Below are positions 53,801 to 59,800 of a stretch of 64,000 nucleotides of DNA, piece after piece (within the stretch, counting starts at the first letter, position 1; the number at the start of each line of letters is the position of its first letter). Source of the stretch: Lytechinus pictus (Eukaryota); the NCBI RefSeq assembly GCF_037042905.1, contig NC_087251.1:20832001-20896000 (forward strand). The letters are read 5' to 3'. Position numbers and translations under genes: made by a program. The notes under the pieces are model-generated. The model was not told the origin of the DNA. It searched no databases and saw only the letters and a list, made by a program, of their open reading frames with translations.

Positions 53801-56800
53801 ATTACTTATTTCTGATACTTCTTTTTATTATAATATTTAGGAAGGAAAAATTTATTTCAGGACATACATGTATTATTCCTTCATATTTTGATTAGAACTG
53901 TTAGTTGTAATCATTTAGAATCACAAGAATTCAACTGTACATAAACATTGTATTTGAAACTGATTGTCAATATATTTATATTACACACATTTGCAAAACT
54001 GCAACAGCCTGCTTTGATAAAAAGGGAGAAAAGTTTGAGCTGTTAACATGTTGCTGATTGACCTGAAATTAATGCAAATGCAAAATACATAATTGCTTTG
54101 CTAATTTGTTAATTACTTATTGTAAGATCTTTGTTATCTCTAGAGCACTTATTTATTCTAATAGATTTGATAGTAATACAAATCTGATTTGTGATTACTA
54201 CTTTTGTAGATATTGATCAGTTTAATAAAATAGAATTGCATTTTGCTGTGTATTGAATGTATTAATTCTGCTTTGTTGTGTTTCAGGAGAGAGCTTGTAT
54301 TCACCTGTATGTATATCATAGACTATGTGATGTTGGTCACACAAACTTTTGTAGATGTGGTAAGTGTTTACTCTTCCTAAATCTCAGAGAAGTCTTCATA
54401 AGTTAACATTATCACCATTTTTCATATTGTCTGAAATCCTAATTGTTGGCTTGGTTGAAGTATGCACGCACCTTAATGTGTAAGATCTTTCAAATCACTT
54501 CAAAATAGTTGTATATAATACTTTTACAGTAATCAGAGGAAGAGTTAACCTTTTAAATGAATACAAATTTAACTTTTATTTTTTTAAATCAAATAACTAC
54601 CTTGGTTTGTTACAGAAAATCTTGCCTTGCAGTTTTGGAGAATGATTTTCTTTTGCATTACAGTATATTAAAAATGATATGAAAATACAGAAATTGTTCA
54701 ATTATGAATTATGATAAAAATGGCCTTTTCTCTTTTTTTTAAGCGTTTGGCTCAACCATTTCGATGTCTGCGGGCAGCCATCATTCTGTGCAAGCTGAAC
54801 AACGTACAACACATCTGGGATGTTGTTATGTCAATTGTTATTAAACTGGGAAAGGTACTTAAATGTGTTTTTTCTTTAAAGACCTTAAAAAGTTTATCTT
54901 AAGCATATGTTGTAATATTGTGATATCTATAAATATATATGTATATATATATATATATATTGCTACATTCGTATCCATTATGGATGAGGGATGGGCTACG
55001 AACATGTGAATAGATGTGCTACTATAGTATGACTCATGAGGATGTTTCTGAAAGCATTTTGCTAGTGATTTCCACAGGTAAATTTTCTTTTATTCAATCA
55101 GATGGCATTACATATTTCAGTGAATTTCATTGACAAGATGTTCCTTGAAATACATTTGCAATTTCTTTGAGTTCCAAGTGTAGTTAATGGTGGCAGCAGT
55201 GGGATTCGAGTCCCAGGTGTGTTTAATGGCGGCAGCGTTGGGATTCAAGTTCCAGGTGTATTTAATGGTGGCAGTGATACGATTCGAGTCCCAGGTTTAT
55301 TCAATGGTGGCAGTGATGGGATTCGAGTCCCAGGTGTATTTAATGGTGGCAGCGGTGGGATTCAAGTTCCAGGTGTATTTAATGGTGGCAGTGATACGAT
55401 TCGAGTCCCAGGTGTATTTAATGGTGGCAGCAGTGGGATTTGAGTCCCAGATGTATTTAATGGTGGCTGCGGTGGGATTAGAGTCCCAGGTGTATTTAAT
55501 GGTGGCAGCGGTAGGATTTGAGTGCCAGGTGTATTTTAATGATGTCAGTGGTGGGATTGGAGTCCCAGGTGTATTTCATGGTGGCAGCGATGGGATTTGA
55601 GTCCCGAATGTATTTAATGGTGGCAGCGGTGGGATTCAAGTCCCAGGTGTATTTCATGCTGACAGCGGTAGGATTTGAGTGCTAGGTTTAGTTAATGGTG
55701 GCAGCGGTGGGATTCGAGTCCCAGGTGTATTTAATGGTGTCAGCGGTGGGATTTGAGACCTAGGTATAGTTAATTGTGTCAGCAGTGGGATTCTAGTACC
55801 AGGTGTGTTTAATGGTTGCAGCGGTGGGATTCGAGTTACAGGTGTATATGGTGTCGGCTGTGGGATTCAGGTCACAGGTGTATTTAATGGTGGCAGCGAT
55901 GCGATTCGAGTTCCAGGTGTATTTAATGGTGGCAGTGGTGGGATTTGAGTCCCAGATGTCTTTCATGGTGGCAGCGGTGGGATTAAAATCCCAGGCGTAT
56001 TTAATGGTGCCAGCAGAGTGATTCAAGTTCCTTGTATATTAAATGGTGGCAGCGGTGAGATTCGAGTCTCAGGTGTATTCAATGGTGGCAGTGTTTTCTA
56101 GAGTGTATATTTTCAGTTTTTAATTGAGTATCAGGCTTATTAGCCAGAAATCTTTTGATGTAGGTGTACAGTACGTAACACTCGGCTGCTTGGACCTTCC
56201 CCAATTATTATCAACAATACTGTTGACATGACTTATTCCTTTTCAAACACGTACATTGGTTGCCTGGTAACTTGTGATTCTTTTAAACCCAAGGCCACTT
56301 CTACATCAAATTGATATGGTTAAAATGAGAAATATTAAGCAAATGTAAATTGGAATTTTATCAGAGCTACATGTATGAATCCAGTACGAAGTGAATTTAC
56401 ATAAAATGGTCAGTATGCAAATGAGAGACACCATGATATTGTATGTATTCTTTTGTATGAAATTACAAACATCAGCTTTTGTCAATTTTATGAAGATGAA
56501 ACTCAATCAAATTTGATTTACATTGATGATAATTTTATGCATCCTTGAGAAGTCTAACTGTGTTTGGAGGAAATATTGAAATGTTTGAAAAGTCACAAAT
56601 TAAATGTAAGGGGAATAATAAGTGTGTAACATCATCAACTCCACCATTTACTTCAGCTGCTAGCTTTAGAGGGGAGGGGGACAAAGTTGATGGAAACTCT
56701 TGTATTCATCAATGATCATTATTATATGTTACTGTATATATTTTATGTAAGTCTCTAGAGGCTCCTGCATAGCAAATACAGTCCAGTTCCTGGTCTGGTC

Positions 56801-59800
56801 AAACAATTTATAACTGGATTTAATTGATTTCTGTATTCCAAAGAGATCTCGCACTCTAAACATTCACTATGACTGGTTTAACCAAATGATTCAGAACAGT
56901 TCTCTCTGCCAGTGAGTTAATATGGCTTCGGATGCTGTTGCTTCAATTGACATTGTACTACACCCCTATATTAAATCTAATGATATTGTATTTTTTATTT
57001 CTATTAGGTATTTGTCATCATTATTGTATTCATCATCTTGTTCTCTGCTATTGGAGTACATCTATACACAGACACATATCACAACATAGAACAAGAATCT
57101 TCAAACTGTACAGGCAACTCAACAAATGTATATGTTGGGTAAGTTTTTGTTCAAAGTTTTAGCCACAGTGATGGAGAAAATATCATTATTACTTTTTCAG
57201 ATTATGAATATTAGTTTTATGTTACCTAACAGAAATAATGTTAAGAATCAATGTTTTGTTTGTTTGCAGTTGTAGTGAAGTGATGTGCCTTGTTTAAAAT
57301 AAATGATAAAAATGATGATAATATACATGTACTGTACTTATCTAGATCATTTCAAAATCTGTCTCTTTGCACTAGAGATGGAATCAAGTGAAATGTGCCT
57401 GAACGCACTTCCTTTTCTCAACATTGGAAACAGATTTTTAAGTAATTCCTTTCATCAATGTACTCAGAGAGAGAGAGTAAAATGAGAACAGGGCACTCCT
57501 GATATTGGATTCATGTCCATTTTATTAGGAATCTTGTCCAAGCTGCACATGTGTTTGTCCATGTGATGGAGCTTCTCCATTAAAAGTTTATTCATGTAGT
57601 ATATTTTTATTTATTTGATTTATTTAATATTCTTATTTTTGTTGTTGTTGTTTGGGGAAGGGGGATCTACATGTAGCTCTTTACAGTCTCCCAAGGTAGT
57701 GTATTGGACATTGTGAGAAGATTGAATACTGTTTAAGTTTAAAGATTACATTGTGATTTGTGTTTCCATTTTTATGCAGAGCCTTTGATCATGTTGGTAT
57801 TACATCTCTGAGGTTATTTGTGCTACTATCTACAGAGAACTATCCAGTAAGTTTTACACCTCATTTTTTTATATAATTACTATTATGTTAACCGATATAT
57901 CAATAATGATATGATAGACTTAAAATGACAGATTCCTAGGTGTATGGTGTTACACTTCGTCTTTTGAACTATAAACTACACCCAGGTAAGTAATGTGCAG
58001 TGATGTAGAAAAGACTTGCAAATGGTAGTGATGGTAGTGATTTTTTTTACCTGACTGCTAAGAAAAGCATGAATGCTTGTAAGCAAGCAACCAGAGGACC
58101 AACAGCTTAAGGTCTTCTCTGAGGGACCTGGTAATGAGGATTAATGCCTTACCAAAGGGCACTAGCACACCAAGTGGGAATCGAACCTGGGTCAACAGAA
58201 TCCAAAACCCCTGTTCTACCGACTGAGCTATAGTGCCTCCCTAAATCAAAGCCGTATGTTTGCAAAAAACTTTCAAAGTGTTTGTATCAGAGATAGATTT
58301 TAATTAGCATAATTTAAGAAGCTTGGGTCCAGATATATTTTTATCAAACTTTCACTGAATGAACATCATGACCACCAATCAACTTTCACTTTTAAACTCA
58401 ACACTAAAAATGCAATATTCTTGTTTTAATTTCTGTGTAGGATCTAATGATTCCAGCATATGCAACAAGCCATTGGAACTTCCTCTACTTCGGAATCTTC
58501 CTTTTTGTTGGTGTTTTCTTTCTCACTGCCATCATGCTAGCTATCATTGTGGATAGCTACTGGTATGTTAAATATGTCTCCACTATCAAACATGACACCC
58601 ACCACCATCATCCTATGAACTATTAAGTAAAAAAAAAAAAAGGATTGTAGACTGAAGAGAGAGATTTCTTACTTCAAGAGGATTTATTTTAACTTGGCAT
58701 TCGTATGAAAGACACTTGTAGTAATAACAATGGGAACTTAGAATTTCAGACATTGTAATTTCTGAATATGGAAGAAATCGGCCTCAAAGAGTGCAACCTT
58801 AATCAACCAGTCAAGTATACTAAAAGTATATCCTTTTTCCTTGCTAGTCAAGGCTTCATCAAAATACAATGCAGGCATTTAAAAGACTTACTGTTCTTGT
58901 ACAAAATTCCTTTGATTATGTTGATATTGACAAGCTATTATTGCCATTTTCTTTTAGTTCTAGTGAAGTCCAAGAAATCCTCGGTGATTATACCTGAAAA
59001 TGCTACCTGGTTCCTTGCCATAATAGAATTCAATGAAAATACAAATTCAATCCTTTCAAAACCTGCATATTCTCAATTATGATATATATTGAACATACCA
59101 AAGAGTTTTTTCCACCCCATCTACCTTACTATATGGTCTTTACATTCTCCATTGCAGGTCATTCGCCAAGAAGCATGTGAAGAAAGAGAGAGCAAGAGAG
59201 AGGGCAGAATTAGCTAAAGCTTGGAATCTTTTGGATCCTCTTGGTCAAGGGAGTCTCCCAAAGGATGATGGGAGATTCTTGAAACTCCTCAGAATTCTCA
59301 AACCACATGTGAGTCTTCATTTTAGTTTTTTATTTGTTTTTATGGGAGAATACCAAAACATGTTCATCATGCTTAGAGCCTATGTCAAACTACTGCTATA
59401 TCTAGGTCCTGCCTTCTATATATTGTCAATATTATAAGTTTTAGTGCATGTAAGAGATGGTTAACATTGCAGTATTTTAGGAAAATATGATTATCTGGTT
59501 GATATATATCCAACACATTAATACATAGATAGAGTTGGGTAATTTGGGATTGGGAATATTTGTGAAAAATGGCTTCAAAGTTGGTAAATTGGAGTGTGGT
59601 AATTATTATGTGAAGAACAGGTGGTGATACGTTCATAAAACACTATTTTTGACAATTATAACTTACCCCTAAAAAAATAATTTTCTAGTGATATACACTT
59701 TTCTATTATATCCACAGCACACAGAAGAGATGAATCTCCAGCTGATTGACTACTTAGATCATAATGATGATGGTCAGATAGACTCATTACAGTGGACTAT

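What the first reader, a model, noticed from the sequence alone, without database searches (positions are those of the whole stretch)
55168..56092. Intronic tandem array of ~24 antisense copies of the mature tRNA-Leu 3' end (CCA included): multi-PBS or 3'-tRF target array
Seen: the 39-bp unit contains TGGTGGCAGCGGTGGGATTCGA (perfect at 55696-55717; matches of 18 nt or more at 55344, 55618 and 55966), followed by GTCCCAG. Knowledge: metazoan tRNA-Leu(AAG/TAG-type) ends ..GTGGGTTCGAATCCCACCGCTGCCA and gains CCA post-transcriptionally. The unit is therefore the exact complement of its last 22 nt including the non-genomic CCA, with looser similarity (gtcccag vs acccac) beyond. The first 18 nt equal a tRNA-Leu primer-binding site of LTR retrotransposons, but the match runs past A58, where PBS copying normally stops; 22 nt is also the size of the long 3'-CCA tRF class. 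Inference: the unit came from a reverse-transcribed mature tRNA or an extended PBS and was then amplified. Because it lies on the sense strand of the channel pre-mRNA, the intron RNA would present ~24 sites for tRNA-Leu or Leu 3'-tRFs (a sponge, a silencing target or a multi-primer RT template). No LTR, gag or pol is visible nearby.
Basis: partly seen in the sequence, partly recalled or inferred. Interest (0 to 1): 0.9.

Follow-up and report, generated by a model that had tools for sequence, protein, structure and literature searches.

The report
Intronic minisatellite from a retrotransposon primer site
A 39-bp unit repeated about 24 times in an intron really does carry the antisense of this animal's tRNA-Leu 3' end with CCA, but it looks like a decaying, probably functionless minisatellite copied from the LTR/primer-binding-site junction of a gypsy-like retrotransposon.

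Summary
Observation confirmed. Window 55169-56091 is a 39-bp x 23.7 minisatellite. Its + strand consensus is the exact complement of the last 19 nt of this species' own tRNA-Leu(AAG/TAG) genes plus CCA (22/22), followed by a degenerate T-stem.

RNA-seq splice joints place it in a 2,153-bp GT..AG intron of a + strand gene.

Origin: units align across the 5'LTR-end / PBS / leader junction of a young Ty3/gypsy-like retrotransposon family found elsewhere in the genome. That family has identical 148-bp LTRs, a PBS-Leu abutting the LTR, and about 28 nt of tRNA complementarity. A sister array on another chromosome (36-bp unit) matches that junction 30/36. So "extended PBS, then amplified" is supported, and a free tRNA cDNA origin is less likely.

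Function is not supported:
- The 22-nt core decays as fast as the linker (0.117 vs 0.107 changes/site, p=0.75).
- CpG positions decay most.
- Only 1/23 units keep the 22-mer and 4/23 the 18-mer.
- RNA depth over the array is about 0.

Best reading: a neutral, TE-derived intronic minisatellite.

Context: the PBS-Leu 18-mer occurs 473 times genome-wide. At least six other minisatellite types carry it, including a family at 10 or more loci built from the last 42 nt of CCA-tailed tRNA-Leu.

The parts
55169..56091 (+). Minisatellite, 39-bp unit x 23.7. Unit = 10-nt linker GTGTATTTAA + 18-nt PBS(Leu) + TCGA + GTCCCAG
   Evidence: TRF; unit register and per-column counts
55696..55734 (+). The only unit identical to the consensus; 55696-55717 is the only perfect 22-mer complement of tRNA-Leu 3' end + CCA
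55344..55361 (+). Exact 18-nt PBS(Leu); the others are at 55618-55635, 55696-55713 and 55966-55983
55569..55606 (+). Unit that best matches the LTR-end/PBS/leader junction of the gypsy-like element L054 (34/38; it keeps the LTR-type ...TTTCA before TGG)
   Evidence: local blastn
54853..57005 (+). Host intron (GT..AG) that holds the array; flanking exons are 54743-54852 and 57006-57138
   Evidence: RNA-seq joints in runs X21, X22 and a transcript contig in X13
56090..56205 (.). About 110-bp dispersed repeat 'R' abutting the truncated last unit. At least 10 other genomic copies all begin at this same boundary, and none is preceded by the array

Best explanation
This is a neutral intronic minisatellite. 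Its founding unit was a 36-40-bp piece spanning the junction between the last ~10 nt of a 5' LTR (U5 end), the tRNA-Leu primer-binding site, and the first ~10 nt of the leader of a Ty3/gypsy-like LTR retrotransposon. That family's PBS complementarity runs on into the T-arm, an 'extended PBS'. The CCA and the tRNA-Leu identity are there because a PBS is by nature the complement of the mature, CCA-tailed primer tRNA. The unit was then amplified at the DNA level by slippage or unequal exchange, possibly helped by the small T-arm-derived hairpin in every unit. It has since decayed, mainly at methylated CpGs. It is transcribed only as part of the intron and removed with it. Shown: the array, the tRNA match, the intron, the junction homology, the equal decay of core and linker, and the absence of RNA signal. 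Inferred: the order of events, the amplification mechanism, and the absence of function.
For: (1) Own tRNA-Leu genes end as the unit predicts and lack a genomic CCA. (2) L054 (C1:38057431-38062894) is a bona fide LTR element. It has 148-bp LTRs TG..CA that are 100% identical to each other, with the PBS(Leu) directly after the LTR end ...GTATATTTCA. A 725-codon open gag-protease-RT frame follows, with Pfam RVT_1 at E=5.8e-25. The family has at least 5 full copies. Its leader continues CTGATCCCGC, the diverged complement of the tRNA T-loop and T-stem. (3) blastn of L054 LTR+PBS+leader against the whole window hits only the array. The hits always cover query 139-175, which is the last 10 nt of the LTR, the PBS and 8-9 nt of leader, with a best match of 34/38. 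(4) The sister array on C9 (36 bp x 30) has the same 10-nt linker as the window unit. It matches the L054 junction 30/36, and 15/18 outside the PBS. It shares with L054 the non-tRNA states GGATCAG where the tRNA has GGTTCGA. Among 61 background PBS sites only L054 reaches 7/8 in the post-PBS stretch. (5) Neutral decay: core 59/506 vs linker 42/391 changes, Fisher p=0.75; without CpGs 0.080 vs 0.107, p=0.18. The CpG columns are the worst conserved. (6) RNA depth is 0-0.5 over the array against 4-20 on the flanking exons, and no RNA run was listed for the array.
Against: No LTR, leader, gag or pol remnant flanks either array, so how a 39-bp junction piece reached this intron is unexplained. No extant element with the window-type extension (PBS+TCGAGTCCCAG, up to 3 mismatches) exists outside the array. 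The upstream similarity to L054 was partly selected for by my own pattern search, so only the downstream 7/8 is an unselected test (roughly p~0.01 after correction). The window consensus is closer to the tRNA at positions 19-22 than L054 or C9 are, which fits a direct tRNA copy as well. The consensus linker ends AA rather than the CA expected of an LTR end; only 3 units have CA. Absence of function is inferred from one genome and two polyA-type RNA-seq runs.
Confidence: 0.6

Rival explanations
1. The founder was a cDNA of a 3' fragment of mature tRNA-Leu (T-arm + acceptor + CCA, about 29 nt) joined to 10 unrelated bases, with no LTR element involved. It would be a tailless tRNA retropseudogene or a template-switch product, later amplified at the DNA level.
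For: The match is 22/22 including CCA, and the 28-nt alignment reaches the T-stem. The genome holds many 5'-truncated, CCA-bearing tRNA-Leu copies outside tRNA genes (L014-L018, L021, L022, L055). It also holds whole minisatellite families made only of tRNA-Leu 3' sequence (42-bp type). The window unit keeps A58 and TCGA exactly as in the tRNA.
Against: The 10-nt linker plus the post-PBS stretch align to the LTR-end and leader of L054. The sister C9 array shares derived non-tRNA bases with L054. The linker shows no similarity to the tRNA variable arm, so the unit is not a shortened 42-bp type unit.
Confidence: 0.2
2. The array is a working RNA element. On the sense strand of the pre-mRNA it would offer many sites for Leu 3'-tRFs, for tRNA-Leu, or for a pre-tRNA/PBS-dependent silencing complex, acting as a sponge, a silencing target or a chromatin nucleator that tunes the host channel gene.
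For: The sites are in the sense orientation in a transcribed intron. PBS-derived sites are validated 3'-tRF targets in mammals (PMC12853362, PMC7472051). A pre-tRNA/PBS complex recruits Su(var)3-9 to nascent LTR transcripts in Drosophila (PMC13537249). 13/23 units are within 1 mismatch of the 18-mer.
Against: There is no excess conservation of the core over the linker. Seed-type targets are intact in only 4/23 units (tRF-3b type) and 9/23 units (tRF-3a type). RNA depth is about 0. The sister array on C9 has no perfect PBS at all. Similar arrays lie at many unrelated loci, as expected of junk rather than of a gene-specific device.
Confidence: 0.05
3. The array is the internal or terminal tandem part of a small non-autonomous mobile element, together with the ~110-bp repeat R that abuts it. 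It would have arrived in the intron by transposition of that element.
For: The last unit is cut exactly where R starts, and at least 10 other R copies share that very boundary with variable far ends. That pattern is typical of a transposon terminus.
Against: None of the other R copies is preceded by array-like sequence. No exact or near-exact PBS 18/19-mer lies near the two R copies on C2 that could be checked against the hit lists. No target-site duplication was found. The C9 array has no R.
Confidence: 0.1

Closest known systems
Retrotransposon-derived tandem repeats and satellites (e.g. Ogre/Tat 3' UTR repeats; Vondrak et al. 2019, PMC7004042; review PMC12628747)
   Same: A short piece of an LTR retrotransposon non-coding region is amplified head-to-tail and found as an array outside any element.
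   Different: The known cases arise from repeats already inside the UTRs. Here the unit spans the U5-end/PBS/leader junction, so every unit carries a tRNA-complementary primer site. I found no described example of that in four full-text searches, which is weak evidence of absence.
Functional PBS of LTR retrotransposons and retroviruses, and extended primer complementarity (Ty1/Ty3, RSV U5-T-psi-C; from general knowledge)
   Same: There is an 18-nt complement of the primer tRNA 3' end with CCA, and the complementarity continues into the T-arm as in the intact element L054.
   Different: The array has no LTR upstream and no gag/pol downstream, has 23 copies in tandem, and most copies are mutated.
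PBS-derived 3'-tRF target sites in host transcripts (Peacey, Steinberg and Schorn 2026 preprint, PMC12853362; review PMC7472051)
   Same: A PBS relic lies on the sense strand of a host transcript.
   Different: The known sites are single, sit in mature 5' UTRs, are conserved and were validated by reporters. This one is intronic, multicopy, decaying and untested.
tRNA gene arrays, tRNA-derived SINEs and tailless tRNA retropseudogenes
   Same: It has sequence identity to a tRNA. CCA marks passage through RNA, as in tailless retropseudogenes.
   Different: Only the last ~28 nt of the tRNA are present, in antisense to the host gene. There is no cloverleaf and there are no A/B boxes. The remainder of the unit is LTR-like rather than tRNA-like.

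Membership tests
TE-derived minisatellite | Head-to-tail tandem copies of one short unit | tested here: met
   TRF: period 39, 23.7 copies, 80% matches
TE-derived minisatellite | Unit homologous to a defined segment of a dispersed transposable element | tested here: met
   Units align to L054 query 139-175 (LTR end + PBS + leader), best 34/38. Sister array matches 30/36. L054 is proven as an LTR element by its LTR pair and gag-PR-RT frame.
TE-derived minisatellite | Array decays neutrally, with no site class protected | tested here: met
   Core 0.117 vs linker 0.107 changes/site, p=0.75; CpG columns are the worst conserved
Functional LTR-retrotransposon PBS | 18-nt complement of a host tRNA 3' end including CCA | tested here: met
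   Consensus and 4 units are exact; own tRNA-Leu genes confirmed
Functional LTR-retrotransposon PBS | Lies 0-5 nt downstream of a 5' LTR ending in CA | tested here: not met
   Left flank is unique and not LTR-like. Only 10 nt of LTR-end homology per unit. Consensus ends AA; 3 units end CA.
Functional LTR-retrotransposon PBS | gag/pol downstream within the same element | tested here: not met
   No tblastn hit of the L054 polyprotein anywhere in the 64-kb window
tRNA gene or tRNA-derived SINE | Cloverleaf or tRNA-model match with internal promoter boxes | tested here: not met
   ARAGORN finds 0 genes in the window. No Rfam tRNA match at E up to 10 in 54500-56800.
CCA-bearing tRNA retropseudogene | Continuous tRNA homology ending in CCA, then unrelated target DNA, with target-site duplication | tested here: inconclusive
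   CCA is present and homology reaches tRNA position ~49. However, the sequence after CCA resembles an LTR end, and no duplication was found.
Small-RNA sponge or target array | Target sites conserved more than spacers | tested here: not met
Small-RNA sponge or target array | Array-bearing RNA accumulates | tested here: not met
   Depth 0-0.5 over the array in X21/X22 against 4-20 on neighbouring exons. No RNA run was listed. Only two libraries were read, and small RNAs were not sampled.
Small-RNA sponge or target array | Cognate 18/22-nt Leu tRF-3 exists and binds | not testable with these tools

The most novel reading that the evidence does not exclude
The array would be one visible member of a genome-wide class of tandem arrays seeded by reverse-transcription products of the tRNA-Leu primer. 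These products would be PBS junctions, primer read-through past A58, and multimers formed at the CACCA repeat that exists only in CCA-tailed tRNA-Leu. When such arrays sit on the sense strand of introns, they would be recognised co-transcriptionally by Leu 3'-tRFs or by a pre-tRNA/PBS silencing complex, coupling retrotransposon defence to host-gene regulation.
Probability: 0.07. Interest if true: 0.75.

Novelty: new member of a known kind. Interest (0 to 1): 0.33.

Why it matters
For this locus, not much: it removes an attractive but unsupported story (an intronic tRNA-Leu/tRF sponge) and replaces it with a documented origin. The wider pattern is more interesting. In this genome the tRNA-Leu primer site and the tRNA-Leu 3' end have seeded minisatellites again and again, with unit lengths of 36, 39, 42, 51, 61, 69 and 82 bp. 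That suggests the PBS region, or the reverse transcription around it, is a hotspot for tandem-repeat birth. This would be a concrete and testable route from retrotransposons to satellite DNA. It would also supply natural multi-PBS substrates for anyone studying 3'-tRF or PBS-directed silencing outside mammals and flies.

Tried and rejected
- Rfam at E up to 10 and ARAGORN over the region found no tRNA model match. Only sub-threshold snoRNA-like hits appeared, outside the array.
- A search for target-site duplications and for inverted or direct repeats around the array found none.
- Local alignment of the L054 LTR and leader to the flanks of the window array and the C9 array did no better than shuffles.
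- The idea that the 39-bp unit is a shortened 42-bp tRNA-only unit was rejected, because there is no similarity beyond the T-stem.
- A DNA-level origin from a tRNA-Leu gene natively followed by CCA plus the linker was not found. The one gene followed by CCA (L029) continues differently.
- A progenitor with the window-type extension does not exist outside the array.
- I read the A58-to-T change in the T-loop of several other arrays as a possible m1A58 reverse-transcription signature. I kept it only as a lead, because those arrays may share ancestry.
I did not try to read those letters by other means.
- RNA search for the array: none was listed.
- Earlier notes of the scan on tRNA-bearing tandem elements concern other element types and were not used.

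Full report
**The observation**

Tandem Repeats Finder reports one array at 55169-56091 with period 39, 23.7 copies, 80% matches and no indels. I placed 23 units in register. The majority consensus on the + strand has three parts:
- TGG followed by the complement of ...ATCCCACCGCTGCCA, which together make the 18-mer TGGTGGCAGCGGTGGGAT;
- then TCGA and GTCCCAG;
- then the linker GTGTATTTAA.

The 18-mer is found 20 times with up to 3 mismatches. All 20 are in the array, and 0 are expected by chance. It is exact at 55344, 55618, 55696 and 55966. Only the unit at 55696 is a perfect 22-mer.

**The tRNA**

The pattern TCGAATCCCACCGCTGCCA has 47 exact places in the genome. These include gene clusters on contigs C10 and C12, which ARAGORN calls as tRNA-Leu(AAG) and tRNA-Leu(TAG). 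These genes end ...GGCGTGGGTTCGAATCCCACCGCTGCCA and are followed by T-rich terminators, not by CCA. The single exception is one gene (L029), whose downstream sequence differs from the array linker. The unit is therefore the exact complement of tRNA positions 55-73 plus the post-transcriptional CCA. With one indel, the similarity continues to the 5' strand of the T-stem, giving a 28-nt alignment.

**Position in the gene**

RNA-seq reads of two runs, and a transcript contig of a third, join 54358 to 54743 and 54852 to 57006, with GT..AG on the + strand. The array therefore lies in a 2,153-bp intron (54853-57005) on the sense strand, between two small exons. RNA depth over the array is 0-0.5, against 4-20 on these exons. 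No RNA run was listed for the array alone.

**What the 18-mer is in this genome**

The exact 18-mer occurs 473 times, against 0 for the reversed control. I cut out 40 consecutive isolated sites from contigs C1 and C2. In nearly all of them the tRNA match stops sharply after 18-22 nt and the flanks are diverse, with some recurring families. That is what primer-binding sites of many LTR-retrotransposon families look like.

One site was examined in full, L054 at C1:38057431-38062894:
- The 148 bp upstream of the 18-mer recur 5.3 kb downstream at 100% identity, and the alignment ends exactly at the base before the 18-mer.
- That LTR begins TG and ends ...GTATATTTCA.
- About 240 nt downstream, an open frame of at least 725 codons begins, with a zinc knuckle, an aspartic protease motif and reverse transcriptase.
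- Pfam gives RVT_1 at E=5.8e-25. The nearest Atlas clusters are K02A2.6-like retrotransposon polyproteins.
- At least four further full copies exist.

Directly after the PBS, the leader of this element reads CTGATCCCGC. This is a diverged complement of the tRNA T-loop and T-stem, so the family has an extended PBS of about 28 nt.

**Link between the array and that junction**

Four results connect them.
1. A blastn of L054 LTR + PBS + leader against the whole 64-kb window hits only the array. The hits always cover query positions 139-175, which are the last 10 nt of the LTR, the PBS and 8-9 nt of leader. The best unit (55569-55606) matches 34/38 and still has the LTR-type ...TTTCA before TGG.
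2. The genome has exactly one other array of this family, on contig C9, with a 36-bp unit and about 30 copies. Its flanks are unrelated to those of the window array.
3. The C9 majority unit has the same 10-nt linker as the window unit. It matches the L054 junction at 30/36 positions, and at 15/18 outside the PBS. It shares with L054 the states GGATCAG where the tRNA has GGTTCGA.
4. Among 61 background PBS sites, only L054 reaches 7/8 identity to the C9 unit in the stretch after the PBS.

I conclude that the unit is a piece of a U5-end / extended-PBS / leader junction of this element family or a close relative. That explains both the CCA and the match running past A58.

The weak points are these:
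- My pattern search selected L054 partly by its upstream similarity.
- No LTR, leader, gag or pol remnant flanks either array.
- No present-day element carries the window-type extension.
- The window consensus is closer to the tRNA at positions 19-22 than L054 is.

A direct cDNA of a tRNA-Leu 3' fragment therefore remains a live rival, at about 0.2.

**Test for function**

Changes from consensus per site:

| Comparison | First class | Second class | Fisher p |
|---|---|---|---|
| 22-nt core vs 17-nt remainder | 0.117 | 0.107 | 0.75 |
| Core without the two CpGs vs remainder | 0.080 | 0.107 | 0.18 |
| PBS 18 nt vs rest | 0.101 | 0.122 | 0.34 |

The two CpGs are the least conserved columns and change by C-to-T and G-to-A, which is the signature of germline methylation. 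Seed-type target heptamers are intact in 4/23 units (22-nt tRF type) and 9/23 units (18-nt type). The C9 sister array has no perfect PBS left.

Each unit can form a small hairpin derived from the T-arm: -4.9 kcal/mol as DNA, z=-2.1. This may favour slippage, but that is an inference.

**The right edge**

The last unit is cut after 11-13 nt, exactly where a ~110-bp dispersed repeat (R, 56090-56205) begins. At least 10 other copies of R start at the same base and have variable far ends. None is preceded by array sequence. R looks like the terminus of another mobile element that inserted at or into the array.

**Context seen on the way**

Other minisatellites also carry the tRNA-Leu 3' end with CCA.

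| Unit | Copies | Locus | tRNA-Leu content |
|---|---|---|---|
| 42 bp | 31 | L061 | The whole unit is the last 42 nt of CCA-tailed tRNA-Leu |
| 61/62 bp | not counted | L053 | About 52 nt of tRNA plus a spacer |
| 82 bp | about 7 | L103 | About 57 nt of tRNA |
| 51 bp | not counted | L062 | Only the 18-nt PBS |
| 69 bp | not counted | L063 | Only the 18-nt PBS |

For the 42-bp unit, the period equals the distance between the two CACCA motifs of the mature tRNA. The 42-bp type occurs at 10 or more loci. Recurrent birth of tandem repeats from the tRNA-Leu primer region is the part of this story that may deserve a study of its own.

**Comparison with what is known**

Satellites and minisatellites born from LTR-retrotransposon non-coding regions are well documented (PMC7004042, PMC12628747). 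PBS relics as 3'-tRF targets in host transcripts are documented too (PMC12853362, PMC7472051), as is PBS/pre-tRNA-dependent heterochromatin in flies (PMC13537249). Four full-text searches found no description of a minisatellite whose unit spans the LTR/PBS junction. I file this as a new member of a known kind, TE-derived minisatellites. Its sequence content is unusual, and nothing here indicates that it does anything.

Noticed in passing
L061 (G000:C2:26785400-26786700); further loci C2:66444339, C2:53690264, C16:11055514, C16:11270660, C16:12745647, C5:5811934, C5:18945845, C5:29077045, C18:16140851: A dispersed minisatellite family whose whole 42-bp unit is the last 42 nt of CCA-tailed tRNA-Leu, joined head to tail. 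The period equals the spacing of the two CACCA motifs in the mature tRNA (anticodon stem and 3' end with CCA). This suggests birth by slippage or template switching on a tRNA cDNA.
   Followed up: partly
L053:9324-10000 (C7:25909323+), L103:243-807 (C2:51411600), L062:204-671 (C3:9982800), L063:135-872 (C3:12328135): Four more minisatellite types (61/62, 82, 51 and 69 bp) each carry the tRNA-Leu 3' end with CCA. Two extend to the anticodon arm (about 52 and 57 nt of tRNA). Two carry only the 18-nt PBS next to LTR-end-like ...ACA or ...TTTTAA.
   Followed up: partly
whole genome G000: The exact 18-nt PBS(Leu) occurs 473 times (reversed control 0). Most sampled sites are isolated, with the tRNA match ending at 18-22 nt, so tRNA-Leu(AAG/TAG) appears to be a very common primer of LTR elements here.
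   Followed up: partly
L054:7432-10000 (G000:C1:38057431-38062894): A gypsy-like LTR retrotransposon with 148-bp LTRs that are 100% identical and an uninterrupted gag-protease-RT frame of at least 725 codons. At least four other full copies are 95-99% identical. It looks recently active and was described only, with nothing rebuilt.
   Followed up: partly
L014, L018 (same downstream sequence); L015, L017 (same downstream sequence); L016, L021, L022, L055: 5'-truncated tRNA-Leu copies of varying length (about 28-55 nt), each ending in CCA and abutting a repeated non-tRNA sequence. Several junctions read ...ACA + 1-3 nt + TGG on the other strand. They are either LTR ends with primer read-through far past A58, or template-switch chimeras.
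   Followed up: no
L061, L053, L063, L062 array units: T-loop position 58 reads T instead of A (TTCGAAT becomes TTTGTAT and similar) in several of the other arrays. This could be an m1A58 reverse-transcription misincorporation signature or simply shared ancestry. The window array keeps A58.
   Followed up: no
window 54300-54358, 54743-54852, 57006-57138: Three small exons supported by RNA-seq splice joints (GT..AG, + strand).
   Followed up: yes
window 56090-56205: A ~110-bp dispersed repeat with at least 10 other copies (74-82% identical) that all share the boundary at the array edge. It is probably the terminus of another mobile element.
   Followed up: partly
window 56514-56646: Sub-threshold C/D-box snoRNA-like matches in the same intron: 56514-56594 on +, 22 bits, E=0.54; and 56565-56646 on -, 25.6 bits, E=0.16. 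Both are far below gathering scores, and RNA depth there is 0.
   Followed up: no
G000:C12:3032959-3066476 and C10:24156267-24159381: Dense clusters of tRNA-Leu(AAG/TAG) genes spaced 0.4-1 kb apart. There are at least 25 hits of the 3' end within 34 kb on C12.
   Followed up: no
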